NCBI GenBank assembly: GCA_002269645.1
Contig: NIVC01005014.1
Location: forward strand, 27,799-56,328
From: Macrostomum lignano
Taxonomy: Eukaryota
Reading direction: 5' to 3'
DNA: 28,530 nucleotides
In this document: positions 1-28,366 of the stretch, piece after piece
How positions within the stretch are numbered: the first letter of the stretch is position 1
Layout: the number at the start of each line of letters is the position of its first letter
Made by a program: the position numbers and the translations under genes
Notes under the pieces: generated by a model
Database searches by the model: none
Seen by the model: only the letters and a program-made list of their open reading frames with translations
What the model was told of the DNA's origin: nothing

Positions 1-2344
1 TGGTAATCTGCAGTAGCAGCTGAAAGCAGGCACAACAAGAATGCCCCTGGCAAGCATTTCAACTTGATTCATTTTTAATCAATATAATTATATAAAGCTA
101 TGCACAAAACTAGGTTTTTGGTTTTGGTGTTTGGAGGTTGCCAACTTGGTTGTTCAGAGTCAAATAATGAAAGGGGAGGGTGATCAGTAGATCTCACAAG
201 TTTAGGTGGTGAGGCAAACCCATAAAACTCCATTAAGAAGAGAGAGTAAGAAAGAAGGTTTAAAGTGGCAAACATTAAGAGACTGGGAAGAAAGAAGGAG
301 GTGTTGGCTAAAGTGACAAACATACAGAGAAGGGGGGAGTTAAATGGGAGTAGAATTAGATTTGCCTTTTGTTTTCTATATAAGTTTATTGGCTTATTAT
401 CAATTTATATAGATCGATTCACTAATTGTGATTATGGTATGTCTAGTATCCTGTCTATGCCCTAGCAGTGCCTAGTCTAGACTTTAGTGTTAAGGTAATA
501 AATCTCTGACCCACCTTCCAAGTTGTTTCTTTCCTACCCTGTTTTGACTGAGTCATTGTAGATTGCAAATTTAATTCAAGCATTCATCTGACCAATAATG
601 TCAAAATTAAGACATATCCAAACCTTTTATAGAAAGTGCAGTATGCATAGTAAACAGTTATAGGCTATTTCCACGAGTGTGACAGTCAAAGGTTGGTACA
701 TTAATTTCACAAAAAATATATGAAAAAGGGGTTTTGCAGCCTTTTTTCATCAAAAAAATAATAACCAACTAGATCTTTTGAACTTGTTAAACTTGTGACA
801 CAGAAGTTGTTGATTCTCAATTAATTCAGCTTATTGTGCATGTGATGGTCAAAGTTTAGAGAGCAGTTTAATATGTATGTACAACTAACAACTAACTTCA
901 ACTATTTTATCAATGCAGTTCTCATACAAGCTAGAAATAGAAAGTAGAAACCCAAATGATGCTCAAATTGGTTGAGAAATTGTTTTGTGGACAATGGAAA
1001 GCTTCCCGTAAATTTGTTTGTTCAATCCTGGGATTGGCCTGGGATCCCGGGATTGGGTCAATTTTTGTCCAAGATCCCAGGATTGTAAAATGTCCAGGAT
1101 TTAGGAACCCTACCATTAATAGTTAGGAAAAGCATTGGTTTCCCCATCCTAGGAAATTGTTAGACTTAAAAGTTATAGTTATGCTTGAGCTATCCCAAAA
1201 AGCCTATGCAGTAGTTTAGTTACCATGCCATACATATGCAACCTTTGAAATTATAGCATAATTTTTATTTTTTAGTAATATGATATAATTTGGTCTTGTG
1301 AAAAGGCCTTGCAAGAATTTTTTAACAAACTGATGTTTTAGTCTTATATTTGACATTATGAAAGTTTGACATTATAACTTTCAATTGATATATTGAACTG
1401 TAGAGGGGTTGTTTGATTCTTCCTATATGAATATTTAAGTATATAACATCTGAGTTTAATGCCAAGAAAATAATATATCCTAGGGAAATTAAAAAATGCA
1501 ATTTTAAGTTTAGGATAAGCCACATATACTAGAATAACTAGATTTGTCACTCGCAAAAAATGTGTTTCTCTACTCTTTTTTAGTAGCAAAATTAGCATTT
1601 TTTGCCTTTATAAAAGTGAAACTAAAATTTATCTACTTTTAAACAAAATTTTAAGTTTTTAAAGCTGCAAAATTTGTATGTGCCTTATTCTACAAGCAGG
1701 CTAATTAAATAAGCATGTCTGCTGAGTTTTACCAGTTCAAAAATAAATGAATTTAAGATTTAAGACTATAGAAAACTATAAAAATGTAAAATTTTCGAAT
1801 TAGTGCTGGCGCCCAGACATCTCTCTACTGCTCTCTCATTGGCTGAGCTAGCTTGGCCCTCCCCCTCCCCCTAGGCTGAGTTTTGTCCGTCTTGCGTTCA
1901 TTTGTGTACATTGAGTTAACAAATGCTTGTTCATTCTTAACCCCATATGCTCTTGAGGCCGCAAGCCCTGAGGAAGGAAAGGAATTTTACCTTCTACTAT
2001 CAAATTAAAATTACATTAGCGCAGACAACTGCTGAAAAGAGAGTAGAGGCTCTACTTTTTCACAATTTTAATTCCGAGTGACATATCTAGTTATTCTAAT
2101 ATCTGTGGGATAAGCTAGATTTGGCCACATTAGCAAAAAAGAAACTACAAAAGAAATTTCTATTATTGTGAACACATCTTGTCTCTCTCTAGCAGATCAC
2201 GTGTTTCCTTTTGTCAATTCAGGTTATAAATAGTTGAAAGAAAATTTAACACAACAATTGCCTCATTATTGCATGTAATTAGAGATACTATCAAAACAGA
2301 AGCACAGGTTGTAACTATCCAATTAACAACAGACAGTTGATGAA

Positions 2345-3061
2345 ATGTCGATCAACTCCGAGAAGCAGCAGTTGGTGTCCGGCTATGCAAGAGCGGCGCT
2401 ATTCTGTGCAGTGTTCAGTTTCGTATGCGTTTTATTGTCATTTGTGACGCCTTTCTGGCTGCAGAGCTGGCCAAGGGTGCACACGCCTATGGATAGGCTG
2501 GGACTGTGGGAATTCTGCCTAGATGGCTTAGTGCATCGCCTAGACCCCGAGATGCGCTCCTATTTCGGCTGTTGGTGGTCGTTTGCTCCAGAATTTTATC
2601 CTATTCGAAACTACCTGATGCCGCCTTGGTTTAGATTTGTACAGTTCTGCATCACGTTCGGCCTGATGCTGCATATTGGCGCTCTGATCCTGTGCGTCAT
2701 CTATGTTGTCAGGTGCGTTAATAATCCTGAGAGGCGAGCTCTGTTGAGCCAAGTCTTGGCCTATGCTATGCTGTTTATTGGCACCCTGCTAGGCGTTGGC
2801 ATCATCGTATTCGGCTCAAAGTGCTTAGATCCGTATTGGCTACCGAATCCTGAGCTCAACTGGCCATCTTGGAGCTTTGGTCTGGCTGTGCTATCAGTGA
2901 TCTTCTGCTTTTTCACCGCCTGTTTCATGGTGCCGCAGGTGAAATTAGATCGCGAATTGATGATACAGAGAGAGTACGCTTTCCCTATGTCAGCTGGCAA
3001 GTCAACTGACGAATTGATGATGCCCACACCGCCTGGCAGATCTTTGTCGTCTGTTATTTGA
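2345..3061 (+). CDS. Claudin-superfamily tetraspan protein, invertebrate septate-junction type (pickel/Megatrachea-like), single exon, 238 aa
   Basis: ATG at 2345 to TGA at 3059-3061. Four hydrophobic segments, and first-loop claudin signature W..(x)..GLWEFC..C (PFWLQSW...GLWEFCLDG...YFGCWW). Also P-W-F..VQ and NW.SWSFGLAV blocks typical of arthropod-type claudins. C-terminus SSVI is a PDZ-binding-type end. AATAAA at 3344-3349. Confidence 0.85.
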   Translation: MSINSEKQQLVSGYARAALFCAVFSFVCVLLSFVTPFWLQSWPRVHTPMDRLGLWEFCLDGLVHRLDPEMRSYFGCWWSFAPEFYPIRNYLMPPWFRFVQFCITFGLMLHIGALILCVIYVVRCVNNPERRALLSQVLAYAMLFIGTLLGVGIIVFGSKCLDPYWLPNPELNWPSWSFGLAVLSVIFCFFTACFMVPQVKLDRELMIQREYAFPMSAGKSTDELMMPTPPGRSLSSVI

Positions 3062-4477
3062 ACTTGCACATGGGTCAATTATAAATAGGTGAACAAAGAA
3101 GATTGATGAAGTGACAAGATGTTGTTTCGCGTGTACAGATAATGCAGCATTATAGTAGTAGGTTTTGCTTCCTTTTTTAACTAACTGTAAACTACGCTCA
3201 TTGATACTAATGTTTTAAAGTGAAAAAACGTATTTGAAAGCCTATATTTGCTTTATGAAGTCAAATTGGTTAGATGAGATAATCCCGTAAAGTAGCAAAT
3301 CTTCCAATGTACTTTTTTTCTTAGCGGGACTTTTTTGTCCCATAATAAAATACAAAACCTTCCAAAATATAAGCCTTCAACTAATGAAAAATAGCTGGTA
3401 AATAGAAAATCAAATTAAACTATAAATTTCCATTCCAAACGTTGTATTTTCTATTATCTACTTTATAGTTGTCTGTTTCCATCCATTCCAGTTGTTTTCG
3501 GATTTAAAAGTCCATGTGTTTTACATTGTAATCAGCTACTTTAGTACTCATTAAAACTGAAATGTTTATTAGAATCTGTTCCATCTTTGGAGCTCTATTT
3601 GTTGACAAACAAAAACTATGTATGTTACGCATCAAAGCAGTTTGCCACTACAATGTTAATCTGTCAGAAATTTATACAAATATACGACTTTGCTTGTAAG
3701 TTTATATCAGTCTGCGACTGGCACAAGTTGCTATAATCAATGGTTTTTTTTCTATTTTTTCCTAGGAAGTACATTTTTTGTTTGACATTGTTTTGTTATT
3801 AAATAAGCCATTGATATGCATAGAAAAGTACCTACTATTTTTTTCCAAAACGTCTCCTGCACCCTACTTTTAGTAGGCATATTGCAAAATACAAACCTTT
3901 GTTTTGCTCATTTCCTAATGGCCGCTGATATTATTTTTTATTTAACTATGTATAGTACTAACTATACTACTGGCTTGATAAGTAGTGTGTATCGTCGATG
4001 GCTTGCTAAATGGATTTTTGTCTCAATCTAGCTAAGCCTTTTTGTCTTTTTTGGTATGCGGTATGGCTTAAAAAATCCAGTGTAAATTCTGCATATTCGT
4101 ATTCTCATGCACATTCCTTCTCTAACACTTAGCTACCTTTTTTCTCCACCAAAATTGCTAACTCCACTAACTCTGTGGCTTAGACAGCCTCTATTATTGT
4201 ATAAGTATTATTTGAAATCTTTACCACCTCAATTATTATTAATAATCTACCTTTATCATGCGACAGAATGTCTAGCTTATTGTGATATAACTTTTCTGTT
4301 GGTTATTGTAATAATCAATCATATCTTATCTTATTTAATAACAAATAATTTTTACAGTTGCTTAAATAAAATCCCAGGCATTGCTTTATTTACTTGGGTT
4401 TTCTATGATGTTAACTAGCTTTCACTGACTTTACTTGGGGTTGTTTAATTAGGTTTAGTATTCTGTTCTTGCCATCA

Positions 4478-4910
4478 CCAGCCTCTCAGATCCTCAGTTG
4501 CTGGGCAAGCCTCCCAGATCTTCAGTTTCTGATCCAGCCTCCCAGAGTGTCAGTTGCTGGGCCAGCCTCCCAGATCGTCAGTTGCTGGGCCAGCCTCCCA
4601 GATCCTCAGTTGCTGGGCCAGCCTCCCAGAGTGTCAGTTGCTGGGCCAGCCTCCCAGATCGTCAGTTGCTGGGCCAGCCTCCCAGAGTGTCAGTTGCTGG
4701 GCCAGCCTCCCAGATCCTCAGTTGCTGGGCCAGCCTCCCAAATCCTCAGTTGCTGGGCCAGCCTCCCAGAGTGTCAGTTGCTGGGCCAGCCTCCCAGATC
4801 GTCAGTTGCTGGGCCAGCCTCCCAGAGTGTCAGTTGCTGGGCCAGCCTCCCAGATCCTCAGTTGCTGGGCCAGCCTCCCAGGTCCTCAGTTGCTGGGCCT
4901 CCACAGATCC
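4478..4910. repeat. 28-bp minisatellite (CAGTTGCTGGGCCAGCCTCCCAGAkysT)
   Basis: About 15 tandem units, ending ~25 nt before the inferred IMPAD1 acceptor. Confidence 0.95.
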
Positions 4911-4935
4911 CCAATTCTAAGTTACCCTAAAGCAG

Positions 4936-7757
4936 CAATATCAAACCCGTTGCCAACTGCTGGCGGTGTGCCGTCTCAGGCTAAACAAGCTGGGCATCTT
5001 CTGCCTGATAAGTGCAGCGGCACTGCTGTTCCTGCTGCGCACCGAGATGCCCCTGCTAGGCAGAGGCCGCGGCGTCTCAATCAAGGAGCTGCTGTCAGTC
5101 AGCATTGAGCTGTGCGAACGAGCTGGCCAACAGATTTTGCGGCATCGAGCGGCAGCAAAAATTAATAAATCCAGTGCTCAGATTAGCGACTCGGCGCCCC
5201 CAGTTACTAAGGCGGATTTAGCTTCGAATGCCGAATTAGTATTCGGATTTCATAAATCGTTTCCATGGTTACATGTTGTGTCGGAGGAGTCGCAATCGGC
5301 CCCAGTGGATTATCGGGCCCTGGCTTTGGCCAGTCATCGCCATCCAGATTTGGAGCCTTTGAGACACGACTTCTTTGTCAATTCTAACGATGTGCTGGTG
5401 TGGGTGGATCCGCTTGATGGTACGCAAGAGTTTACTGAGCACCTGCTGCAGTACGTGTCTGTTCAGGTGCGTTTTTAATTACCAAGCCGGCTTAACACTT
5501 ATTAATAGATGGCCAAAAAAACGAATAAACTTATTGACTTAGAGGCTTGAAATCTAACTGCTAATATGTGCTTATACGTGAGTAAAATATAGGAGCTATT
5601 GAGACCGGGATGTCAGGAAAAGCTAGACGCAGATGCCGTGAGATAGACAGAGATAGACGTTGCGATGAGGCAGAAAGACAGTGAGATAGAGGCAGAGAGA
5701 CAGTGAGATAGAGGCAGAGACAGTGAGATAGAGGCAGAGATATAGCGAGATAGAAGCAGAGAGACAGTGAGATAGAGGCAGAGACAGTGAGATAGAGGCA
5801 GAGAGAGAGTAAGATAGAGGCAGAGAGACAGTGAGATAGAGGCCGAGAGACAGTGAGATAGAGGCAGACAGTGAGATAGAGGCAGACAGTGAGATAGAGG
5901 CAGAGATATAGTGAGATAGAAGCAGAGAGACAGTGAGATAGAGGCAGAGAGAGAGCAAGATAGAGGCAGAGAGACGGTGAGATAGAGGCCGAGAGACGGT
6001 GAGATAGAGGCAGAGAGACAGTGAAATGCAGCATAGAGACAATGAGTTAGAGGGGAGAAAGAGATTTAGTTAATTAGTTAGAAATCGCACTTATGAAGTA
6101 ATAAGCAAGCAACAATACCTCTAAAACAGGTGTGCGTGGCCTACCGAGGCACACCCCTGCTAGGCGTGCTGCATTTTCCATTCGCTAATAAAACCTATTG
6201 GGCTTGGCGCAATTCTCGCGTATCCGACAGTCTAAAAGAGCAATTAAATTTACCTATTGTGCTGGATAAGCACGTATTAAAATCGGACTCACACATCAAA
6301 GGCGCCGCCGATAAGAGTCACCGACGAAGGCGGGTGCTGATTTCGCGCAGTCATCGGGGCGCTCAATTGAATAGCACGGCTAGAAAATTGTTCCCTAACG
6401 AGTCCGTCGACTTGTTATCGGCTGCCGGGGCGGGTTATAAACTACTGCTGCTTAGTAAGGTAAGAAAAAAGTTTGGAAATTTTACATGTAGTATATGTAG
6501 ACTAGTGTGTGTCCCTCTTCGGAGGATTGTGCAGTTTAACCACTTCAGGCTTGCACCGCGTGACAAGCCGTTTTCTATAAGTCTTGGTGTCTAAACACTT
6601 CTTTAGAAACTCTGGTATCACAGCGATTCCCCGTGAGCCACTTGGCGATTGCATCCTAGCGATTCCCCATGAGCCACTTGGCGATTGCATCCTAGCGATT
6701 CCCCATGAGCCACTTGGCGATTGCATCCTAGCGATTCTCCATGAGCCACTTGGCGATTGCATCCTAGCGATTCCCCATGAGCCACTTGGCGATTGCATCC
6801 TAGCGATTCCCCATGAGCCACTTGGCGATTGCATCCTAGCGATTCCCCATGAGCCACTTGGAATCCTAGCGATTCCCCATGAGCCACTTGGCATCCTAGC
6901 GATTCTCCATGAGCCACTTGGCGATTGCATCCTAGCGATTCCCCATGAGCCAATTGGCATCCTAGCGATTCCCCATGAGCCACTTGGTATCAGGGCGATT
7001 CCCCATGAGCCACTTGGCATCTTAGCGATTCCCCATGAGCCACTTGGCATCCCAGCGATTCCCCATGAGCTACTTGGCATCCTAGCGATTCCCCATGAGC
7101 CACTTGGTATCAGGGCGATTCCCCATGAGCCACTTGGCATCCCAGCGATTCCCCATGAGCCACTTGGCATCCTAGCGATTCCCCATGAGCCACTTGGCAT
7201 CCTAGCGATTCCCCATGAGCCACTTGGCATCCTAACGATTCCCCATGAGCCGTTTGGAATCATAGCAATTCCCTATAAGTCATTTTGTATTTTATAAACT
7301 TCATGTGAGTCATTCAGCATCTCAGCATCCGCTGACGGTTTTTTAGAATGAATTTTGCATTGTATCTGTAGTCTTGTAATCGACATGAGCCATTCGGGTG
7401 TCTTAAAAATTTGAGAGTGTTTCATATATTCATAGGTTATTAATCTAAATATACTAATATACTACTAAAATCCCCACTTGGTTGTTCATTCAGGGATTAG
7501 CTGACAACTATCTCCACGCGGGTCCGATAAAAAAATGGGATCTATGCGCTGGCCAGGCTATCCTAGAAGCCATGGGCGGCCGTCTCAACAGTCTGAGGTC
7601 AATGGGGACAGATTCAACCAGTTCAGGCCATCTGCATCGGATTAACTATGACAATGCCGAGCAGTACAAGCACTCCGATGGCTTCATTGCGTTTGCTCCG
7701 TCGCCGTCGCCTACACCTAAGCGTCCACCAACCAAAGATCCGCGTCTGAGTCAGTAA
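4936..7757 (+). CDS. IMPAD1: Golgi-resident PAP 3'-phosphatase / inositol monophosphatase 3. Exons 4936-5466, 6130-6459, 7494-7757 (~375 aa). No genomic ATG at the start.
   Basis: N-terminal signal anchor (RLRLNKLGIFCLISAAALLFLL) and FIG/IMPase motifs VVSEE, WVDPLDGTQEFTE, GAGYK and KKWDLCAGQAILEAMGG. Phase-0 GT-AG introns 5467-6129 and 6460-7493 join the frames cleanly. The exact 5' start is inferred (AG at 4934-4935). Confidence 0.9.
5638..6025. repeat. Purine-rich ~20-24-bp minisatellite (GTGAGATAGAGGCAGAGAGACA) in IMPAD1 intron 1
   Basis: Tandem units visible directly. Confidence 0.95.
6623..7275. repeat. 36/30-bp minisatellite (GCGATTCCCCATGAGCCACTTGG[CGATTG]CATCCTA) in IMPAD1 intron 2
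   Basis: Tandem units; the 36-bp form dominates at the 5' side and the 30-bp form at the 3' side. Confidence 0.95.
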
Positions 7758-8754
7758 CACGGTCGGTCATTGTATATTATTGAATCTAGGAAAATTTGGG
7801 GAATTTGTTTCCACCGTGACAGCAGCTGAGCTGTGATTTATTATATGTGTGTTCCTAGAATATGCAACAAATTTGTTCTCCAAAGTGTTGGAAATTTTAG
7901 TATATGTGGACTAGCTCAGCTTAAGTGTCCCTCTTCGGGGATTGTGCAGTTGAACCACTTTAGGCTCTGATGACTCTTACCATCCAGATTGACCAAGTGG
8001 ATTGGTTGTGCGATTTACACCTGTGGTGAGGGCCGCTTTACGCCCTGTGTGAGCTGTGTGTATGAGTGACGATGTTGGTGTGGTTCTTGGCATGAAAAAT
8101 TAACAAAGCTCTGTTTATTTAAAAGCTCATTTTTTGTTTCCCAGCAGAAAAAAATAATCTGTCAACTAACGTCCAGTCTGTACTACTTAATCTCGCCTGC
8201 CTGCTGAGTAGTATGTATACCGTAAGTGTTGCCTCGGTTCTTTATTTTTCAATCGCCTTTCTTGCTGTCTACTTATATTGACCAATTTGCTGAACACGCT
8301 TTCAAGCAAGTGACACTAGGGCTGTTGTCCTGTTGTTAGAATACTCATTTTTATGTGTATTATGTTTTTTATAATCTTACTTTTCCTGCTGTGTGCTTTT
8401 GCTGTTAATTTGTTGTTGTGCTAAAAAATCTGATTTCTCACATTTTTCTCTGCTTGCCTCTGTGTTTGTTTGTCCGTTAGCATCATCTTCTGCAAAACAA
8501 CGTAACTGAGTTTTTATTCAATAATAGCTCATGTTGGTTTCTGTCTGTCTATTTCTGTTTGTAAATATATATATATTTTTTAAATATAGATATCGCTTTA
8601 TCAGCAGGGTTGAACGAGATGTTTTGCTTCTGATTTATTCCGTTTTTACCTCGTTGAATTTAAACGGTCTTAGAAGTGATTTTGCGACTCTCTTGTTTAT
8701 TCAATTTCTGAAATTTGTACTGAATCGCCTTTGAAATCTGGTAAGGAGTGTAGG

Positions 8755-9597
8755 TGGTATCGTGCAAGTGGATGTAGGTGTCTTGTAGGTAGTGTAGGTG
8801 TCTTGTAAGTGGGTGTAGGTGTCTTTTAGGTGGGTGGTAGGTGTCTTTTAGGTGGGTGGTAGGTGTCTTGTAAGTGGGTGTGGATGTCTTGTAAGTGGGT
8901 GTAGGTGTCTTGTAAGTGGGTGTAGGTGTCTTGTAAGTGGGTGTGGGTGTCTTGTAAGTGGGTGTAGGTGTCTTTTAGGTGGGTGGTAGGTGTCTTGTAA
9001 GTGGGTGTGGGTGTCTTGTAAGTGGGTGGTAGGTGTCTTGTAAGTGGGTGTGGGTGTCTTGTAAGTGGATGTAGGTGTCTTTTAAGTGGGTGTGGGTGTC
9101 TTGTAAGTGGGTGTAGGTGTCTTGTAAGTGGGTGTGGGTGTCTTGTAAGTGGGTGTGGATGTCTTGTAAGTGGGTGTAGGTGTCTTGTAGGTGGGTGGTA
9201 GGTGTCTTGTAAGTGAGTGTGGGTGTCTTGTAAGTGGCTGTAGGTGTCTTGTAAGTGGCTGTAGGTGTCTTGTAAATGGCTGTAGGTGTCTTGTAAATGG
9301 CTGTAGGTGTCTTGTAAGTGGCTGTAGGTGTCTTGTAAATGGCTGTAGGTGTCTTGTAAGTGGCTGAAGGTGTCTTGTAAGTGGCTGAAGGTGTCTTGTA
9401 AGTGGCTGTAGGTGTCTTGTAAGTGGCTGTAGGTGTCTTGTAAATGGCTGTAGGTGTCTTGTATATGGCTGTAGGTGTCTTGTAAGTGGCTGTAGGTGTC
9501 TTGTAAGTGGCTGTAGGTGTCTTGTAAGTGGCTGAAGGTGTCTTGTAAGTGGCTGAAGGTGTCTTGTAAGTGGCTGAAGGTGTCTTGTAAGTGGTTT
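8755..9597. repeat. ~21-bp G/T-rich minisatellite (GTAGGTGTCTTGTAAGTGGsT)
   Basis: About 40 tandem units between IMPAD1 and PIGL. Confidence 0.95.
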
Positions 9598-9728
9598 TAG
9601 ATTGGCCTGTAATCCTGTAATAGGTATTGCATTACCCCAGGTATTTGGTAAAAAAAAGTCTGCAGTCTACTCGCTAAACACCGTTTTCAGTCCCAGCTAC
9701 CAAGTTCGGCAGGTGATTCCCCACTCAG

Positions 9729-11288
9729 CCGTCGCATCTGACGCTGTCAATTCTGTTAATATCTCTCACAGTACTGATTGTTGCAGTCTACCTGATAGCT
9801 TGTCGTTTGAGTAACAATTGCTTGCTGCGACTTGGCAACCAGCTAATTGGCTTGAGAGACCCGGTGAGGAGGTTTTTTATTTATCTGATATGGCCTTTTC
9901 TGTCGGCAAGAGTTCTCGAGGGTTTGTCACCCTCTCAGATTCTCAAACAGAGTCTGACACCCTCTCAGATTCTCAAACAGAGTCTGACACCCTCTCAGAT
10001 TCTCAAACAGAGTCTGACACCCTCTCAGATTCTCAAACAGAGTCTGACACCCTCTCAGATTCTCAAACAGAGTCTGACACCCTCTCAGATTCTCAAACAG
10101 AGTCTGACACCCTCTCAGATTCTCAAACAGAGTCTGACACCCTCTCAGATTCTAAAACAGAGTCTGACACCCTCTCAGATTCTCAAACAGAGTCTGACAC
10201 CCTCTCAGATTCTAAAACAGAGTCTGACACCCTCTCAGATTCTAAAACAGAGTCTGACACCCTCTCAGATCATCAAACAGAGTCTGACACCCTCTCAGAT
10301 CATCAAACAGAGTCTGACACCCTCTTGCATCCTCAAACTGAGTCTGACACCCTCTCAGATTCTAAAACAGAGTCTGACACCCTCAGATTCTAAAACAGAG
10401 TCTGACACCCTCTCAGATTCTCAAACAGAGTCTGACACCTCTCAGATTCTTAAACAGAGTCTGACACCCTCTCAGATTCTCAAACAGAGTCTGACACCTC
10501 TCAGATTCTTAAAACAGAGTCTGACACCTCTCAGATTCTAAAACAGAGTCTGACACCGTCTCAGACTCTCAAACAGAGTCTGACACCCTCTCAGATTCTT
10601 AAACAGAGTCTGACACCCTCTCAGATTCTCAAACAGAGTCTGACACCCTCTCAGATTCTTAAACAGAGTCTGACACCCTCTCAGATTCTTAAACAGAGTC
10701 TGACACCCTCTCAGATTCTCAAACAGAGTCTGACACCCTTTTTCGCACAGAGCGCAGCCACATCTGAACAGTCGCCTCTCCGGTTGCTATTGGTTACCGC
10801 TCATCCGGACGACGAATGCATGTTCTTTGCGCCTCTATTGTTGGCCCTATCCGCCCAGTCTGAGTCGCCTAGCAACCATCGTTGGGAACTGTATCTGGCC
10901 TGCTTATCCACCGGCAATTATTACGGACTTGGCGATATTCGCGTGTCCGAGCTGACACTCGCTTGGACCGAAGGGTTCGGACAGTCGGTCAATAGGCTTC
11001 GAATAGTGAACGATTCTAGACTTCCGGATAGCAACTCGATTGATTGGCAGGCGGCTCATATTGACGATTGCGTATCTGGACTGATTGACGAGTGGCAGAT
11101 TGACTGCTTAGCCACCTTTGACAGCGGCGGGGTGAGCGGCCACGCCAATCACAGGGCTTTGCAACGCTGGGCTCTGAGCCGCTGCGCCAGCCACCGACTG
11201 CGTCGGGATAGGCCTGTGCCTGTGCTGCTGCTGAGGACTGTCGGACTGGCTAGGAAGTATTCGGGTGAGCTGACTGTCTGTGTGTCAC

Positions 11289-11320
<32 letters not shown>

Positions 11321-11557
11321 TTGTGTGTCTGTCTGTCTGTTTGACTGTCTGTCTGTCTGTCTCTTAATGTCTATCTGACTGTCTGTCTGTTTTTCATGTC
11401 TGTCTGTCTGTCTGTCTGTTATGTGTGTCTGTCTGTCTCTTAATGTCTATCTGACGGTCTGTCTGTTTATCTGTCTGTCTGTCTGTCTGTCTGGTGTCTG
11501 TCCGTCTGGCTGTCTGTTCTGTCTCTCTGTCTGTCTGCCTGTCTGTCTGTCTTTGTG

Positions 11558-11594
<37 letters not shown>

Positions 11595-11986
11595 TAGTGT
11601 ATGTCTCCGTCTGTCTGCCTGCTTCTCTCTTGCTGTCCATTCTTTATGCTTGTCCGTGTTTCTCTGTCTGTCTGTCAATCAAGCGGCCGCTCTCACAACG
11701 CAGACACATCGTAGCCTAACCGAGCGCCACTCTTTTCGTTCACAAACGCCTTGCAGGTGTCCTGGCCATCCTGCCGGCCCTGCTGGAGCATTCTCTGTCG
11801 CATTCGGACCCCTCGCCGGCGACGGCCCTCTTCGTCACGCTTCCCAGCCGCCTCCTGACGCCGCTGCGCTGCATGCGGCACCACCTCAGCCAGCTGGTCT
11901 GGTTCCGCTATCTCTACTGCCTGTTCTCCAGCTACCTGTTGATTAATACGTTCGAAATTTATGGTCTCCATGGCAACGTTAACTAA
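9729..11986 (+). CDS. PIGL: GlcNAc-PI de-N-acetylase. Exons 9729-9863, 10751-11264, 11757-11986 (~293 aa). No genomic ATG at the start.
   Basis: Motifs LLVTAHPDDECMFFAP, CLSTGN, TFDSGGVSGHANH and RKY, plus C-terminal MRHHLSQLVWFRYLYCLFSSYLLINTF, all matching the PIG-L family. Exon 1 (missed by the ORF track) encodes a TM anchor, LTLSILLISLTVLIVAVYLIAC. Donors GTGAGG 9864 (phase 0) and GTGAGC 11265 (phase 1); acceptors CAG 10750 and CAG 11756; stop TAA 11984-11986. Confidence 0.9.
9928..10738. repeat. 30-bp minisatellite (CCCTCTCAGATTCTCAAACAGAGTCTGACA) in PIGL intron 1
   Basis: About 27 units, each with an imperfect internal palindrome TCAGATTC...GAGTCTGA. Confidence 0.95.
11272..11677 (+). 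repeat. Degenerate (TCTG)n microsatellite in PIGL intron 2
   Basis: Seen directly. Confidence 0.95.
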
Positions 11987-12393
11987 TATTAGTAGTAGCC
12001 CTAGTAACCATGGCGACAAGGCGACTCGAAAAGCCGCGCACGAAGCGTTCGTCTCGGGTCACGGCGGATGCAGTCTGGTGGAAATCTGGCTGCATCTCAC
12101 CCTGCCCTGTCTGCTGCTGGCGCTGACCGCTCAGCTGCGATGCTGTTGCCATGGCAACAGTCGTCTGTTGCGTCTGATTGGCTGGCTTGAAGCCGGTCTT
12201 CTCTGCTGCTCGGCGGTGCTGCAGCTGACAGTCCTGGCCGATCACGTGACCGAACTGGTCTGCGCCGCTGCCGCCTGCCTGCTGCTGCTGCTGCCCTTCG
12301 CTCAGCGGAACAACTTTGACTTTGTTGTCGAGCCGCCCCAGCCCAGGCCGCTGTTCAAGGAATTCCAGGTGCGTGACAGACAGACAGACACAC

Positions 12394-12436
<43 letters not shown>

Positions 12437-12439
12437 CAA

Positions 12440-12520
<81 letters not shown>

Positions 12521-12755
12521 AAGACAGACAGACACAGACAGGCAGACAGATAGACAGACAGACAGACAGGCAGACAGATAGACAGACAGACAGACAGACA
12601 GACACAGACAGGCAGACACAGACAGGCAGACACAGACAGACAGACAGACAGACAGACACAGACAGGCAGACACAGACAGGCAGACACAGACAGGCAGACA
12701 CAGACAGGCAGAAACAGACAGGCAGACACAGACAGGCAGACACAGACAGGCAGAC

Positions 12756-12810
<55 letters not shown>

Positions 12811-12823
12811 CAGACAGGCAGAC

Positions 12824-12854
<31 letters not shown>

Positions 12855-15800
12855 TAGACAGACAGACAGACAGGCAGACAGATAGACAGACAGACAGACA
12901 GACAGACACAGACAGGCAGACAGATAGACAGACAGACACAGACAGACAGAGGGACAGACAGACAGACAGGCAGACAGATAGACAGACAGACACAGACAGA
13001 CAGACAGACAGACAGATAGACAAGCAAATAGACAGACGGACAGACAGACGCACACTTCGCCCCAAGCACACAGATTCATCAAGAAAAGAGGTTACACGGA
13101 CAGTCCCCGCCCACCCTTCATTCCGCAGGCCCTCCTGCTGCTGCAGACATCCGTCGCCATTCTGGCCGTGGATTTCCCGGCCATGCCCCGCCGCTTGGCC
13201 AAGGCCGAGTCCGCCGGCGTCGGTCTCATGGACGTCGGCGCTCCGGCGTTTGCCTTCGCCAGCGGCTTGCTGGCGCCGGCGCCGACTCCGTTTTCAATGT
13301 CGCGATGGCGCCGATCCCTGGTTGGCGCCTGTCTGCCGCTGGCGCTGCTCGGACTGGCGAGGACTCTGGCTGTGAAGGCTTCGGATTATCAGGTAATATC
13401 CTGGGATCTTTTAAAGGGATTTTTCTATTCGAGGATTTTTGCTTGAGATTTGGATTTCTAATCTTGCGAATATTTTTGGGAATTTCCATCTTAGGGAAAT
13501 TTTGGGGATTTCCCATTTAAGGGATATTTTGGAAGATTTTTTCTTATTGGGGATTTCTCATCCTTAAGATATTTGGGGATTTCTCATCTTGGGGATATTT
13601 TTGGGGATTTTTCATCTGGGGGATCTTATTGGGGAATTCTCATCTTGGGGATATCTACAGGTATATCTATTAGGGATTTTTATGCTAATGATCTTGTTTG
13701 GAATTTTACATACATTCGAGGCGTTTTATTCCGAGGATGTTGTTGTGGATGAAGGCTAACAACCCCGCCTCCAACCAAACAATCCACGACACGCAGGAGC
13801 ACGTCACCGAGTATGGAGTGCACTGGAACTTCTTCATCACCCTGGCCTGTCTCCGAGCGGTCTGGCCTGCGCTGTCCGGCCGGCCGGGGCTCTGGTCGCT
13901 GGTTCTCGCCGCCGGACACTGCCTCCTGGTGCTGCCGTTCGGTGGGGCCGAGTTTCTTTTGGCTAGCGGCGATCGGCACCTGTTGTGGCCGCTGGTGGCC
14001 AACAAGGAGGGCCTGATGTCGCTGCCGCCCTACTGCGCCATCTATTGCGCCGGCGCCGCTATTGGTCGACGATTGCGCGTCGGAACTGAGTCGACTGCTG
14101 CAGGTGCGACGGGTTTCATTGCTAGGCTAGTATCTCTAGCGTGTCTAGAGATTGAGATCTTTCGACATCGTAAGACTGAGATCTTACTCTATGCGCAGCG
14201 TGTCTATAGACCATGCTCTATATAGCGTGTCTAAAGACCCGGATCTATATAGTATATCTATAGATTGGGATCTATATAGTGTATCTATACTCTATAGACT
14301 GGAATCAATATATGGCGTGTCTATAGACTGGGATCTATGTAGTGTATCTATAGACTGGGATCTATGTAGTGTATCTATAGACTGGGATCTATGTAGTGTA
14401 TCTATAGACTGGGATCTATGTAGTGTATCTATAGACTGGGATCTATGTAGTGTATCTATAGACTGGGATCTATGTAGTGTATCTATAGACTGGGATCTAT
14501 GTAGTGTATCTATAGACTGGGATCTATACAACAAAACAACAGAGTACGCTGCCGGGTCGTAAAAAGCAACGTCAGATGGCACGCTTCGAAGCTTGGGCGC
14601 AAACAAAGGCCGCACCGCCGGCAGAGTCCGGGGCGCCGGCGTCAGCCAGCAGACAGTCGACGTAGCGCCGTGTCCTCGCTTGTCCCCGCCGGTAGGGTGC
14701 CTGCAACGTAAGTAGCAGCACCTCCTGCACCGGCTCCGGACAGTAGGCCTCGGCGCGGATGACGTGGCCTGCCAGCTGGAGTCGCCAACGGCGCAGCAGA
14801 TCGCTAGGACGGGCCAGGCCGGCGCGATGGTAGAGCGCCATGTTGGTGACTCGCTCGTTGCCGATCTTGAAGGCGGCGCGCAGCAGGCCAGCGTGCGCCG
14901 CGTCGACTTGAGCCTCGAGCGAGTCTGTCAGCGTCCAGGTCTCGGCGTTGTATAACAGGACGGTTTCGATCACCGCCTGGAACAGCGCCGCCCTCTGGCG
15001 GTCCGGTAGGGCCTCGGACTGCAGGACTGACCTTATAGAACGAAAGGCAGCCCAGGCAAGTCCTCGGCGACGCCGCAGATCCTCGCGAACGTCGGGAACC
15101 AGACCGCCGAGGTAGACGAACTGCTGACATCTTGGAAGCTCACTCGCCTGTCCGTCAGCGCCTCGGCAGAAGATTGCAACCTCGGTGTCGTCCGGCACGC
15201 ATAGCACGACGGTCTTCTGCGTGTTGACCACCAGGCCGACGCTCGCCGCAACGGCAACCAGCCTATCCAGCTGTCGTTGGGCGCCCTCGACGGTCGAGGA
15301 CAGCAGGGCGAGGTCATCGGCGTAGCCAAGCACGCTGAGCCGTGTCTCCGGTTGGCGTCGACCCACGCGTCGCCGCAGCAGGAAGCCGTCGTCGTTGGAA
15401 GGCAGAGCAGTCCGTAGCACCCAGTCAAGCACCAGAATAATAGCGTCTATGTAGTGTATCTATGTAGTGGATCTATGTAGTGTATCTATAGACTGGGATC
15501 TATGTAGTGTATCTATAGACTGGGATCTATCTATATATAGCGCGTGTTTAGACTGGGATCTATTTATATATGGCGTTTTTTATACTCTAGGATCTATATG
15601 ACGTGTTTATAGACTGGGATCTCTATAGCGTTTCTATAGACTATGATCAATGTTGTCTATAAACAATCAATTTTTGTATTAGGATGTCTATATCATACGA
15701 TCTATAGTGATCTATAGCACAAGTTTCTGAAATAAACTAACAGTTAACCGCTACAATAGAATTATTCAATCCTCTCGTCATCCCAGACGCCAACCGCCTG

Positions 15801-16247
15801 ATCTCGTGGCCCCTGCTACTGCTAGCCATCGTGGCCCTGCCATGGGCCCTGACTGTGGCCTCTGTCAAGTTGCCGCCTATCGTAACTGAGCCTTCTCGGC
15901 TTCTGTTCAATGCCGGATTCCTGATCACCTGCCTAGCCGCCTGCTGTCAGGTGCTGTTGATGCTCACCATCGGCCGGCTGCTCTGCCTCGGCTCCATCGA
16001 TCGGTCGTGTTCGCCTGTGCTAGCTCTGATTGGCCGGTGTAGTCTGGCTTATTTCCTATTGGCTAATCTGCTTACGGGAGCCGTTAATCTGACTGTAGAT
16101 ACTGTGGCAATTAGCGACAAATTAGTTGCTATGGGGATTTTGATTGTTTACCTAATCTGTCTGGTTGGCTCGTTACCGTTGCTGTCTATGGTAATTGGGG
16201 CTTGGCAACAGCGTGGCCTTGCTGGGTCGCGCAGCAAGGCGGAGTGA
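11961..16247 (+). CDS. PIGW: GPI inositol acyltransferase (GWT1/PIG-W). Exons 11961-12368, 13129-13392, 13797-14103, 15787-16247 (~479 aa).
   Basis: Motifs HEAFVSG...LVEI, AILAVDFPAMPRRLAKAE..GVGLMDVG, YQ|EHVTEYGVHWNFFITL, NKEGLMSLPPY.AI, PSRLLFN and YFLLANLLTGAVNL. GT-AG introns 12369-13128, 13393-13796 (both phase 0) and 14104-15786 (phase 1) keep the frame. The start codon is uncertain (11961, 11970, or 12010 with an indel). AATAAA at 16893 and 16902. Confidence 0.9.
12375..13055 (+). repeat. Degenerate (CAGA)n microsatellite in PIGW intron 1
   Basis: Seen directly; it is the reverse complement of the 11272-11677 array. Confidence 0.95.
13401..13680. repeat. Degenerate TTGGGGATTTT-type repeat in PIGW intron 2
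   Basis: Recurrent GGGAT(T/A)TTT cores with irregular spacing. Confidence 0.7.
14130..15715. repeat. 27-bp minisatellite (TAGTGTATCTATAGACTGGGATCTATG) in PIGW intron 3, interrupted by the RTE-like fragment
   Basis: Units on both sides of 14529-15441, degenerating outwards. Confidence 0.9.
14529..15441 (-). mobile_element. 5'-truncated non-LTR retrotransposon (RTE-like), C-terminal half of the reverse transcriptase plus a short 3' tail
   Basis: Uninterrupted minus-strand frame IILVLDWVLR...LGYADDLALL...QQFVYLGG...DLRRRRGLAWAAF...VLLYNAETWTLT...LAGHVIR, ending in a stop at 14572. GC-rich island with sharp borders inside an AT-richer minisatellite. Minus-strand 3' end TGTTGTTTTGTTG. No clear TSD. 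Confidence 0.85.
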
Positions 16248-25601: not shown

Positions 25602-28290
25602 GAATTCCTCAGGTAAAACTGTGATTCCCAAATTCCTCAGGTAAAACTCTGATCCCCAAATTCCTCAGGTAAAACGATCTGATCCCCAAATTCCTCAGGT
25701 AAAACTCTGATCCCCAAATTCCTCAGGTAAAACGATCTGATCCCCAAATTCCTCAGGTAAAACGATCTGATCCCCAAATTCCTCAGGTAAAACTCTGATC
25801 CCCAAATTCCTCAGGTAAAACTCTTATCCCCAAATTCCTCAGGTAAAACGATCTGATCCCCAAATTCCTCAGGTAAAACTCTGATCCCCAAATTCCTCAG
25901 GTAAAACTCTTATCCCCAAATTCCTCAGGTAAAACGATCTGATCCCCAAATTCCTCAGGTAAAACTCTGATCCCCCAAATTCCTCAGGTAAAACGATCTG
26001 ATCCCCAAATTCCTCAGGTAAAACGATCTGATCCCCAAATTCCTCAGGTTAAACGATCTGATCCCCAAATTCCTCAGGTAAAACTCTTATCCCCAAATTC
26101 CTCAGGTAAAACGATCTGATCCCCAAATTCCTCAGGTAAAACTCTGATCCCCAAATTCCTCAGGTAAAACGATCTGATCCCCAAATTCCTCAGGTAAAAC
26201 GATCTGATCCCCAAATTCCTCAGGTAAAACTCTGATCCCCCAAATTCCTCAGGTAAAACGATCTGATCCCCAAATTCCTCAGGTAAAACGATCTGATCCC
26301 CAAATTCCTCAGGTTAAACGATCTGATCCCCAAATTCCTCAGGTAAAACTCTTATCCCCAAATTCCTCAGGTAAAACGATCTGATCCCCAAATTCCTCAG
26401 GTAAAACTCTGATCCCCCAAATTCCTCAGGTAAAACGATCTGATCCCCAAATTCCTCAGGTAAAACGATCTGATCCCCAAATTCCTCAGGTAAAACGATC
26501 TGATGCCCAAATTCCTCAGGTAAAACGATCTGATGCCCAAATTCCTCAGGTAAAACTCTGATCCCCCAAATTCCTCAGGTAAAACGATCTGATCCCCAAA
26601 TTCCTCATGTAAAACTCTGATCCCCAAATTCCTCAGGTAAAACTCTGATCCCCAAATTCCTCAGGTAAAACTCTGATCCCCAAATTCCTCAGGTAAAACG
26701 ATCTGATCCCCAAATTCCTCAGGTAAAACGATCTGATCCCCAAATTCCTCATGTAAAACTCTGATCCCCAAATTCCTCAGGTAAAACTCTGATCCCCAAA
26801 TTCCTCAGGTAAAACTCTGATCCCCCAAATTCCTCAGGTAAAACTCTGATCCCCAAATTCCTCAGGTAAAACTCTGATCCCCAAATTCCTCAGGTAAAAC
26901 TCTTATCCCCAAATTCCTCAGGTAAAACGATCTGATCCCCAAATTCCTCAGGTAAAACTCTGATCCCCCAAATTCCTCAGGTAAAACGATCTGATCCCCA
27001 AATTCCTCAGGTAAAACGATCTGATCCCCAAATTCCTCAGGTAAAACGATCTGATCCCCAAATTCCTCAGGTAAAACGATCTGATCCCCAAATTCCTCAG
27101 GTAAAACTCTGATCCCCCAAATTCCTCAGGTAAAACGATCTGATCCCCAAATTCCTCATGTAAAACTCTGATCCCCAAATTCCTCAGGTAAAACTCTGAT
27201 CCCCAAATTCCTCAGGTAAAACTCTGATCCCCAAATTCCTCAGGTAAAACGATCTGATCCCAAATTCCTCAGGTAAAACGATCTGATCCCCAAATTCCTC
27301 ATGTAAAACTCTGATCCCCAAATTCCTCAGGTAAAACTCTGATCCCCAAATTCCTCAGGTAAAACTCTTATCCCCAAATTCCTCAGGTAAAACGATCTGA
27401 TCCCCAAATTCCTCAGGTAAAACTCTGATCCCCCAAATTCCTCAGGTAAAACGATCTGATCCCCAAATTCCTCAGGTAAAACGATCTGATCCCCAAATTC
27501 CTCAGGTAAAACTCTGATCCCCAAATTCCTCAGGTAAAACGATCTGATCCCCAAATTCCTCAGGTAAAACACTGATCCCCAAATTCCTCAGGTAAAACTC
27601 TGATCCCCCAAATTCCTCAGGTAAAACTCTGATCCCCCAAATTCCTCAGGTAAAAATCTGATCCCAAATTCCTCAGGTAAAACTCTGATCCCCAAATTCC
27701 TCAGGTAAAACTCTGATCCCCAAATTCCTCAGGTAAAACTCTGATCCCCAAGTTCCTCAAATAAAACTCTGATCCCCAAATTCCTCAGGTAAAACTCTGA
27801 TCCCCCAAGTTCCTCAAATAAAACTCTGATCCCCAAATTCCTCAGGTAAAACTCTGATCCCCCAAATTCCTCATGTAAAACTTTGATCCCCAAATTCCTC
27901 AGGTAAAACTCTTATCCCCAAATTCCTCAGGTAAAACTCTGATCCCCAAATTCCTCAGGTAAAATGATCTGATCCCCAAATTCCTCAGGTAAACTCTGAT
28001 CCCCAAATTCCTCAGGTAAAACTCTGATCCCCAAGTTCCTCAGGTAAAACTCTGATCCCCAAATTCCTCAGGTAAAACTCTGATCCCCAAATTCCTCAGG
28101 TAAAACTCTTATCCCCAAATTCCTCAGGTAAAACTCTGATCCCCAAATTCCTCAGGTAAAACTCTGATCCCAAGTTCCTCAAATAAAACTCTGATCCCCA
28201 AATTCCTCAGGTAAAACAATCTGATCCCCAAATTCCTCAGGTTAAACTCTGATCCCCAATTCCTCAGGTAAAACTCTGATCCCCAAATTC
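25602..28290. repeat. 28/30-bp satellite (GATCCCCAAATTCCTCAGGTAAAAC[TCT/GATCT]) with a higher-order duplication
   Basis: About 90 units. Identical minus-strand ORFs at 26397 and 26948 mark a 551-bp block duplication. Confidence 0.95.
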
Positions 28291-28366
28291 CCCTGCTGAA
28301 CGTTAAATTCTGATCCTAAAAATTAGTCACAATTGATTAAGATATAATTACCTACTTAGCTAATAT

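What the first reader, a model, noticed from the sequence alone, without database searches (positions are those of the whole stretch)
9714..9863. PIGL has no genomic start codon; an in-frame AG suggests the AUG comes from the spliced leader
Seen: the frame encoding the TM anchor (PSHLTLSILLISLTVLIVAVYLIACRL) is closed upstream by TGA 9714-9716 with no ATG. The first in-frame ATG (10820) lies after the catalytic HPDDE motif, so it cannot be the start. CACTCAG at 9728 puts the next base exactly in frame. The nearest upstream strong donor (8741) is preceded in frame by TGA 8732-8734, so it cannot supply Met. Established: flatworm spliced leaders end in AUG, and in Schistosoma this AUG can act as the initiator. 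Inference: the mature protein starts M-PSHLTL, with translation dependent on trans-splicing.
Basis: partly seen in the sequence, partly recalled or inferred. Interest (0 to 1): 0.7.

Follow-up and report, generated by a model that had tools for sequence, protein, structure and literature searches.

The report
Flatworm PIGL gene lacking its own start codon

Summary
The window is Macrostomum lignano, assembly Mlig_3_7, contig NIVC01005014.1 (identical over 13,061 nt).

TGA 9714-16 closes the frame of the TM anchor. There is no in-frame ATG before 10820, which lies after HPDDE. The AG at 9727-28 is in frame.

However, the three sister copies in the same assembly carry CCCCC where the window has CCCC (9719-9722). 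UniProt A0A1I8HWW2 matches the window's translation 418/418 once one C is added. Single-copy 1-bp homopolymer deletions, some frameshifting conserved exons, are common in these contigs, so the 4-C run is probably a consensus error.

With 5 C, TGA 9714 is out of frame. This site matches the published M. lignano SL-acceptor motif [T/C]TNCAG. The SL ends in ATG, giving M-SQLPSSAGDSPTQPSHLTL… There is still no genomic ATG, and two copies give an intact 305-codon ORF from this acceptor.

So the general idea is strengthened but the details change. There is no direct RNA evidence. A cis micro-exon (ATG TAT ACC|GTAAGT, 8213-8221) remains a rival. The mechanism has been known since Cheng et al. 2006, so interest is modest.

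The parts
9685..9690 (+). TTTCAG, the consensus SL trans-splice acceptor ([T/C]TNCAG). The junction is 9690|9691.
   Evidence: The motif comes from PMC8629364. It occurs once per ~640 nt of non-repeat + strand. It is conserved in all four copies; L004 reads ATTTTCAG. The UniProt models start exactly here (FQ|SQLP).
9691..9863 (+). PIGL first coding exon. It is 173 nt here and 174 nt (58 codons, phase 0) in the sister copies. It encodes SQLPSSAGDSPTQPSH, the TM anchor LSILLISLTVLIVAVYLIA and a linker. It contains no ATG in any frame.
   Evidence: mean Kyte-Doolittle hydropathy 2.81 over 19 aa. The donor is CCG|GTGAGG.
9719..9722 (+). C-run of 4 in this contig and 5 in L001, L002 and L004. This 1-bp deletion shifts the frame.
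9714..9716 (+). TGA that closes the TM frame only in the 4-C version. It is out of frame with 5 C.
9722..9728 (+). It is in frame in every copy but does not match [T/C]TNCAG. It could be a minor alternative SL site.
9864..10750 (+). Intron 1, containing a 30-bp minisatellite (9928-10739).
10751..11264 (+). PIGL exon 2. HPDDE is at 10802-10816 and the first in-frame ATG at 10820.
   Evidence: and (PF02585, E 2.6e-15).
11757..11986 (+). PIGL exon 3 with stop TAA at 11984-11986. Intron 2 is 11265-11756.
11950..11998 (+). 49-nt GT..AG segment. Its removal fuses the PIGL frame to the PIGW frame (…LLINT|PSNHGDK…), as in the UniProt models. It contains the PIGW ATG 11961.
11961..12368 (+). PIGW (GWT1) exon 1. 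It overlaps the end of PIGL by 26 nt. The full PIGW is 479 aa and ends at 16247.
   Evidence: (PAA46177.1; PF06423, E 2.8e-86).
8213..8227 (+). Rival cis micro-exon ATG TAT ACC followed by donor GTAAGT (8222-8227). It is in phase 0 with both acceptors.
   Evidence: In L004 the donor reads GTAAAT.
8766..9594 (+). 21-bp minisatellite (39 copies) between the upstream gene and PIGL. Most units contain GTAAGT.
4921..7757 (+). Upstream gene, an IMPAD1-like inositol monophosphatase. Exons run …-5466, 6130-6459 and 7494-7757. It also lacks an ATG before its TM anchor. It is the preceding gene of the same transcriptional unit.

Best explanation
PIGL of Macrostomum lignano has lost its own initiator codon.

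Proposed mechanism:
- The pre-mRNA is trans-spliced, probably as part of a multi-gene transcriptional unit that also carries the upstream IMPAD1-like gene and the downstream PIGW.
- The 35-nt spliced leader (…TTATTGCATG) is joined at the consensus acceptor TTTTCAG|TCC (window 9690|9691).
- The leader's terminal AUG then lies in frame with the first exon and starts the protein as M-SQLPSSAGDSPTQPSHLTL-[TM anchor]-…HPDDE….

In this contig one C of a C5 run is missing. This is most likely a PacBio consensus error, or otherwise a defective copy. The deletion creates the apparent TGA closure and makes only the weaker acceptor at 9728 look in frame.

Shown: the absence of any genomic ATG, the in-frame consensus acceptor in 3 of 4 copies, intact ORFs from that acceptor, and the AUG-terminated SL of this species.

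Inferred: that this mRNA is trans-spliced at that site and that ribosomes start at the SL AUG.
For: 1. Species and SL. The best protein hits are M. lignano. The window is identical to GCA_002269645.1 NIVC01005014.1. The SL is CGGTCTCTTACTGCGAAGACTCAATTTATTGCATG and the SL-acceptor motif is [T/C]TNCAG (PMC8629364).

2. The C-run. L001, L002 and L004 have CCCCC; only the window has CCCC.

3. ORFs from the acceptor. Starting at TCC after TTTTCAG, L001 and L004 give an uninterrupted 305-codon PIGL ORF. Exon 1 is 174 nt, phase 0. The frame is closed upstream by TAG or TAA with no ATG between.

4. Published model. UniProt A0A1I8HWW2 equals the window's translation from 9685 with one added C, 418/418. 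It is a start-less fragment that begins at the TTTCAG hexamer. The independent UniProt model of the neighbouring IMPAD1-like gene also starts exactly 6 nt before an in-frame CAG| junction (LQ|AVCRL). This suggests both models derive from SL-bearing transcripts.

5. The 4-C run looks like an error. Outside repeats there are 21 single-copy gaps against 3 single-copy extra bases. L002 and L003 together carry 12 unique 1-2-bp deletions against 6 unique substitutions. Three of these deletions frameshift conserved exons, each in one copy only. GenBank's truncated products for L002 agree.

6. Operon context. GenBank names make the IMPAD1-like gene and the PIGL/PIGW gene consecutive members of one transcriptional unit: Mlig004071g8/g9 and Mlig007363g1/g2. 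In Wudarski et al. 2017 such units are cut into genes at SL and poly(A) signals.

7. Precedent. The SL AUG is in frame in 28% of S. mansoni trans-spliced mRNAs, and more than 40 cDNAs need it (Cheng 2006, cited in PMC9851317).

8. The rival donor is weakened. In the divergent copy L004 it carries +5 G>A (GTAAAT), while the acceptor is kept.
Against: - No SL-containing read or cDNA was available, so the trans-splice site and its use are inferred.
- The window's own sequence puts the consensus acceptor out of frame. It would give MSQLPSSAGDSPLSRRI*.
- The UniProt models extend 6 nt upstream of the acceptor. This could also mean an unspliced 5' end.
- GenBank annotates no PIGL CDS at all in any copy.
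- The putative outron contains a 21-bp minisatellite (about 39 units), most of whose units carry GTAAGT, plus other donor-like sites. These could favour cis-splicing.
- A phase-0 micro-exon with ATG (A at -3) and donor GTAAGT lies 1.47 kb upstream. Its ATG TAT ACC is conserved in all four copies.
- The four copies are too similar (98-99.9%) for conservation to discriminate. The residues SQLPSSAGDSPTQ show no variation, so coding constraint on them is untested.
Confidence: 0.6

Rival explanations
1. PIGL has an ordinary genomic start in a 3-codon micro-exon. ATG TAT ACC (8213-8221) with donor GTAAGT is cis-spliced to 9691 (MYT-SQLPSS…) or 9729 (MYT-PSHLTL…). The exon may itself begin at a TSS after the TATA-like TTTATTTAAAAG (8114-8125), or at the acceptor-like TTTTTTGTTTCCCAG|CAG (8130-8147).
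For: Among all ATG-plus-GT combinations upstream, this is the only in-phase one with a consensus donor. The ATG has A at -3 and is the first ATG after 8145. ATG TAT ACC and the acceptor-like tract are identical in all four copies.
Against: - About four strong donors lie in the non-repeat intergenic DNA, and each has about a 1/4 chance of an in-phase ATG before a stop. One such hit is therefore expected by chance.
- In the divergent copy L004 the donor is GTAAAT. It loses the +5 G required by the species' GT[G/A]AG motif.
- The UniProt transcript-like models do not contain this exon and are start-less.
- No canonical poly(A) signal was found in the ~1 kb downstream of the IMPAD1-like stop, so the exon could lie inside that gene's 3' UTR.
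Confidence: 0.17
2. The SL is joined at CACTCAG|CC (9728|9729) and the protein starts M-PSHLTL. The 4-C sequence of this contig is real.
For: It is the only productive in-frame acceptor in the window as given. The site follows a pyrimidine-rich stretch (TTCCCCACTCAG). It is in frame in all copies, so it could serve as a minor alternative site.
Against: ACTCAG does not match [T/C]TNCAG, whereas TTTCAG 38 nt upstream does. The 4-C run is unique to one of four copies, in an assembly rich in 1-bp homopolymer deletions. The UniProt models include 9691-9728 as coding.
Confidence: 0.1
3. PIGL is neither started by the SL AUG nor by the micro-exon. Translation starts at a near-cognate codon (for example CTG 9738 or 9744) on a leader with no AUG, or the start lies in an unrecognised exon further upstream. 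Alternatively, the window copy is a real pseudogene.
For: From the acceptor, the mRNA body has no ATG in any frame for 239 nt. This is what a non-AUG start would need. The window copy is frameshifted as assembled.
Against: The ATG-free stretch is not significant against the gene's own ATG density: 5 in 918 nt gives P about 0.27. The candidate CTG has a poor context. Other copies are intact.
Confidence: 0.08

Closest known systems
[quoted passage not shown]
   Same: Both involve a flatworm SL ending in AUG and a conserved ORF open to an in-frame acceptor. In both, there is no genomic AUG before essential N-terminal residues.
   Different: The species is a free-living macrostomid and the gene is PIGL. 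Here there are no cDNA or transfection data. One assembled copy carries a frameshift that hides the arrangement.
slORFs: ORFs created by SL addition (Song et al. 2023, PMC9851317)
   Same: Both share the concept that the leader supplies the start codon of the translated ORF.
   Different: slORFfinder was applied to nematodes, ascidians and euglenozoa using ribosome footprints. No flatworm footprints exist, and none are available for this gene.
[quoted passage not shown] 2017, PMC5730564; Ustyantsev & Berezikov 2021, PMC8629364)
   Same: The genes are same-strand neighbours named as consecutive members of one transcriptional unit. A [T/C]TNCAG acceptor is present, and tandem repeats inflate the intergenic distance.
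   Different: Those papers do not discuss use of the SL AUG as initiator. PIGL has no CDS of its own in that annotation. The PIGL and PIGW ORFs overlap, which is not the usual poly(A)-then-acceptor operon junction.
Canonical PIG-L (GlcNAc-PI de-N-acetylase) genes of other animals and fungi
   Same: PF02585 domain, HPDDE motif, a single N-terminal TM anchor and a C-terminal …NTF… tail.
   Different: Orthologues start with a genomic Met a few to about 15 residues before the TM segment. The M. lignano gene has none.

Membership tests
Flatworm mRNAs initiated at the spliced-leader AUG | The organism's SL exon ends in AUG. | tested here: met
   The species was identified as M. lignano. The published SL ends …TTGCATG (PMC8629364; also PMC10468722). 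No SL RNA gene lies in the window.
Flatworm mRNAs initiated at the spliced-leader AUG | The mRNA is actually SL trans-spliced at an acceptor at the 5' end of the ORF. | not testable with these tools
   No RNA reads or cDNAs were reachable. The evidence is indirect only: a consensus acceptor at 9685-9690, UniProt models that begin at that hexamer, and transcriptional-unit naming.
Flatworm mRNAs initiated at the spliced-leader AUG | The SL AUG is in frame with the conserved ORF, with no stop in between. | tested here: met
   At 9690|9691 this holds in L001, L002 (exon 1) and L004. In the window copy it holds only at 9728|9729.
Flatworm mRNAs initiated at the spliced-leader AUG | No genomic AUG can supply the N-terminus. 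| tested here: inconclusive
   There is none within the exon or between it and the upstream in-frame stop in any copy. The first in-frame ATG lies after HPDDE. A cis micro-exon at 8213-8221 cannot be excluded.
Flatworm mRNAs initiated at the spliced-leader AUG | Translation starts at the SL AUG. | not testable with these tools
   This needs ribosome profiling, N-terminal proteomics or reporter assays.
PIG-L / LmbE deacetylase (PF02585) | A PIG-L domain with the HPDDE metal-binding motif, plus an N-terminal membrane anchor. | tested here: met
   PF02585, E 2.6e-15, residues 58-187. There are 774 homologues. HPDDE is at 10802-10816. TM hydropathy is 2.81.
SL-resolved operon (polycistronic transcriptional unit) | Same-strand neighbours are transcribed as one unit and separated by poly(A) and SL signals. 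| tested here: inconclusive
   Claudin-like, IMPAD1-like, PIGL and PIGW are all on the + strand. GenBank locus tags give consecutive gene numbers within one unit. No canonical AATAAA lies between the IMPAD1-like stop and PIGL. The signals themselves were not seen.

The most novel reading that the evidence does not exclude
Several genes of one M. lignano transcriptional unit have lost their own initiator codons and depend on trans-splicing for translation. IMPAD1-like and PIGL both lack an ATG before their N-terminal membrane anchors. PIGL may in addition be spliced through a 49-nt intron into PIGW. That would give a roughly 750-aa bifunctional enzyme for steps 2 and 3 of GPI-anchor synthesis, whose only AUG comes from the spliced leader.
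Probability: 0.25. Interest if true: 0.55.

Novelty: new member of a known kind. Interest (0 to 1): 0.33.

Why it matters
If confirmed, PIGL would be a clean case in a free-living, transgenesis-ready flatworm of a conserved housekeeping gene whose translation depends on SL trans-splicing. The neighbouring IMPAD1-like gene may be a second case.

This has a practical consequence for annotation. Gene callers that require a genomic ATG miss or truncate such genes. GenBank has no PIGL CDS in any of the four copies, and one UniProt model starts at the internal Met after the catalytic motif.

It is also a caution about assembly quality. Single-base homopolymer deletions in Mlig_3_7 can create false stops and false 'in-frame' or 'out-of-frame' calls. 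Fine-scale frame arguments should therefore be checked against the sister copies.

Tried and rejected
- Searches for transcript-derived PIGL proteins or fragments carrying an SL-derived Met found nothing from M. lignano beyond three UniProt models. The N-terminal-only search did not even return the known UniProt hit, so its negative result is weak.
- The look-up of P0001 found no encoding contig.
- A metagenome scan for the exon-1 DNA, allowing 4 or 5 C, gave 0 hits.
- Supplements of Wudarski 2017, Grudniewska 2016 and Grudniewska 2018 contain no PIGL, PIGW or IMPAD1 entry.
- The Wasik 2015 and Cheng 2006 papers are not held.
- ATG depletion of the 5' 239 nt looked suggestive: P = 0.014 (first-order Markov model of the CDS) and 0.036 (mononucleotide shuffle). 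It is not significant against the gene's own low ATG density, so I dropped it.
- Conservation footprinting between copies has too little divergence to separate the rivals: 98-99.9% identity, with about 9 substitutions in 580 nt even for L004.
- The bacterial promoter/terminator scan is not meaningful for this eukaryote.
- Rfam found nothing in the window.
- Fusion of PIGL to the upstream IMPAD1-like coding exon was rejected, because the only in-phase donors there are non-consensus.

Full report
**Identity of the window**

A PIGL model was assembled from three exons: 9729-9863, 10751-11264 and 11757-11986. It hits PF02585 (PIG-L, E 2.6e-15). Its only close relatives are three UniProt entries of Macrostomum lignano, 97-100% identical; the next hit is 39%.

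A look-up with the intact claudin-like ORF (2345-3058) returned three loci of the M. lignano assembly Mlig_3_7, GCA_002269645.1. The window is identical to one of them, L003 (contig NIVC01005014.1), over the whole 13,061-nt overlap. A fourth, more divergent copy, L004 (NIVC01004692.1), was reached through the PIGW protein.

The window holds four + strand genes in a row:
- claudin-like, 2345-3061
- an IMPAD1-like inositol monophosphatase, …4963-7757
- PIGL
- PIGW/GWT1, 11961-16247

Minisatellites fill almost every intron and spacer.

**The observation**

- TGA 9714-16 closes the TM frame.
- There is no ATG in that frame up to the donor at 9864.
- The first in-frame ATG is at 10820, just after HPDDE (10802-10816).
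- CAG 9726-28 leaves 9729 in frame.
- TGA 8732-34 blocks the 8741 donor.

The in-frame AG adds little by itself. It is the only AG in the 20 nt between the stop and the TM segment, and any AG is in frame one time in three.

**What changes the picture**

The UniProt models A0A1I8HSS1 and A0A1I8HWW2 begin FQSQLPSSAGDSPTQPSHLTL. In the window, FQSQLPSSAGDSP and TQPSHLTL lie in two different frames.

The sister loci explain this. L001, L002 and L004 read GATTCCCCCACT with five C, and only the window/L003 has four. Adding one C to the window, and removing the two introns plus a 49-nt segment, reproduces A0A1I8HWW2 exactly, 418 of 418 residues.

The missing C is probably an assembly error rather than biology:
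- Outside tandem repeats, the three nearly identical copies show 21 single-copy gaps against 3 single-copy extra bases.
- L002 and L003 differ by 12 unique 1-2-bp deletions but only 6 substitutions.
- Such deletions frameshift conserved exons in one copy at a time: the IMPAD1-like exon 2 and PIGL exon 3 in L002, and PIGL exon 1 in L003.
- GenBank's truncated L002 products (246-aa IMPAD1-like, 338-aa PIGW) reflect the same problem.

A real defective allele cannot be excluded without short reads.

**Anatomy with five C**

TGA 9714 falls out of frame. The PIGL frame now runs back through TTTTCAG|TCC (9690|9691) to an in-frame TAA or TAG, 13-22 codons further up, with no ATG.

From the base after that AG, exon 1 is 174 nt (58 codons, phase 0). 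L001 and L004 give an uninterrupted 305-codon ORF ending in the usual PIGL tail …NTFEIYGLHGNVN*.

TTTCAG matches the motif [T/C]TNCAG, reported as the top motif at 21,754 mapped M. lignano SL sites (PMC8629364). That motif occurs only once per ~640 nt of unique + strand sequence here.

The species' single SL is CGGTCTCTTACTGCGAAGACTCAATTTATTGCATG. Joining it at 9691 gives AUG UCC CAG…, that is M-SQLPSSAGDSPTQPSHLTL, followed by a strong TM segment (mean hydropathy 2.81). In the intact copies the 9728 acceptor, 39 nt downstream, is also in frame, so either site would work.

**Indirect RNA evidence**

No reads were reachable, but three observations bear on transcript structure.

1. The start-less UniProt PIGL models begin exactly at the TTTCAG hexamer. 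The UniProt model of the neighbouring IMPAD1-like gene (A0A1I8HWG3, LQ|AVCRLRL…) likewise begins exactly 6 nt before an in-frame CAG| junction. Two unrelated genes with the same offset to an acceptor suggest transcripts whose genome-matching part starts at the acceptor, as SL-bearing cDNAs do. This is my inference.

2. GenBank locus tags make the IMPAD1-like gene and the PIGW-containing gene consecutive members of one transcriptional unit: Mlig004071g8/g9, Mlig004071g4/g3 and Mlig007363g1/g2. In that annotation, units were cut into genes at SL and poly(A) signals (PMC5730564).

3. PIGL has no CDS of its own in any copy. This is expected if an ORF without an ATG shares an mRNA with the longer PIGW ORF.

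**Rivals**

I enumerated every upstream ATG, GT donor and acceptor combination that keeps the PIGL frame. One has a consensus donor: ATG TAT ACC|GTAAGT at 8213-8221. It has A at -3 and sits behind a TATA-like box and a pyrimidine-rich CAG. It would give MYT-SQLP… or MYT-PSHL….

It cannot be excluded, for these reasons against and for:
- With about four consensus donors in the unique spacer, and a 1/4 chance each of an in-phase ATG before a stop, one such hit is expected by chance.
- The divergent copy L004 has changed the donor to GTAAAT, losing the +5 G of the species' GT[G/A]AG motif, while it keeps the acceptor.
- The UniProt models do not contain this exon.

Non-AUG initiation has no positive support. 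The ATG-free 239 nt are unremarkable given the gene's low ATG density.

One caveat applies to trans-splicing. The putative outron carries a 21-bp minisatellite of about 39 units, most of which contain GTAAGT. These could compete as cis donors if the primary transcript starts upstream of the array.

**Comparison with what is known**

All reported flatworm SLs end in AUG, and that AUG can serve as initiator. [quoted passage not shown] 2006, as cited in PMC9851317 and PMC12582326). For Macrostomum, the terminal ATG has been noted as a likely start codon (PMC10468722).

The finding is therefore a probable new example of a known mechanism, not a new mechanism. Membership cannot be declared, because two defining features could not be tested: trans-splicing of this mRNA and initiation at the SL AUG.

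**Verdict**

It is real in this contig, but its key details rest on a copy-specific 1-bp deletion.
- Interest is modest, at 0.33.

Noticed in passing
window 4918-5050 (IMPAD1-like first coding exon): The upstream IMPAD1-like gene has the same peculiarity. Its frame opens after TAA 4918-20 and encodes a TM anchor (LGIFCLISAAALLFLL), and its first ATG (5047) lies after the anchor. GenBank calls the CDS 'partial', starting VCRLRL at 4966. The UniProt model starts LQ|AVCRL, which implies CTGCAG| before 4963, whereas Mlig_3_7 reads CTGCTG. In-frame AGs also lie at 4931-32 and 4934-35. This may be a second SL-AUG-dependent gene.
   Followed up: partly
window 11950-11998 and 11961-11986: PIGL and PIGW catalyse consecutive GPI-anchor steps. 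They overlap by 26 nt, with the PIGW ATG at 11961 and the PIGL stop at 11984-86. No poly(A) signal follows PIGL. Three UniProt models remove a 49-nt GT..AG segment (weak donor GTTCGA, branch-like CTAAT) and fuse the two ORFs (…LLINT|PSNHGDK…). GenBank instead starts PIGW at ATG 11961, inside that segment. The junction is identical in all copies. Whether this is a bicistronic mRNA, a fusion protein or both is open.
   Followed up: partly
window 2226-2275: TTATTGCATG, the last 10 nt of the SL, lies at 2266-2275, 70 nt upstream of the claudin-like ATG. With two 1-nt gaps the match extends to CTCA-TT-ATTGCATG. It is followed by TAA, and a TATAAATA box lies at 2226. The 10-mer occurs by chance in 7 of 100 shuffles. 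It may be a relic of a retroposed trans-spliced mRNA (the gene is intronless), or coincidence.
   Followed up: partly
L002 (window-equivalent 6356, 7396, 11806), L003/window 10, 591, 1581, 6051, 7936, 9718: Mlig_3_7 contigs carry many copy-specific 1-2-bp deletions, many of them in short homopolymer runs. Several frameshift conserved exons and produce truncated GenBank proteins (PAA48646.1 at 246 aa, PAA48645.1 at 338 aa). Frame-level arguments in this assembly need checking against sister copies.
   Followed up: yes
window 8766-9594; also 4478-4899, 9928-10739, 25603-28291; L004 about 3414-7021: Minisatellites sit immediately upstream of, or inside, every gene here. Most units of the 21-bp array upstream of PIGL contain a perfect GTAAGT. 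In the divergent copy L004, about 3.6 kb is inserted between IMPAD1-like and PIGL; it appears to contain copies of the 28-bp repeat family seen at 25603-28291, but its extent was not characterised. Array lengths differ between copies.
   Followed up: partly
window 2345-3061 versus L001: The claudin-like gene differs at 7 nucleotides between L001 and L002/L003, yet encodes the identical 238-aa protein in all three loci. All seven changes are therefore synonymous, which indicates purifying selection on duplicated copies.
   Followed up: partly
window 14572-15432, minus strand: A 286-aa ORF with a weak reverse-transcriptase match (PF00078, 25.3 bits, below the 29.6 cut-off) lies inside a PIGW intron. 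It is probably a retroelement fragment.
   Followed up: partly
window 9650-9657: The A-run 34 nt upstream of the acceptor is 8 A in L002/L003 and 7 A in L001/L004, the two copies with intact PIGL ORFs. A 1-nt length difference there is consistent with non-coding outron upstream of 9691, or with further consensus errors.
   Followed up: no
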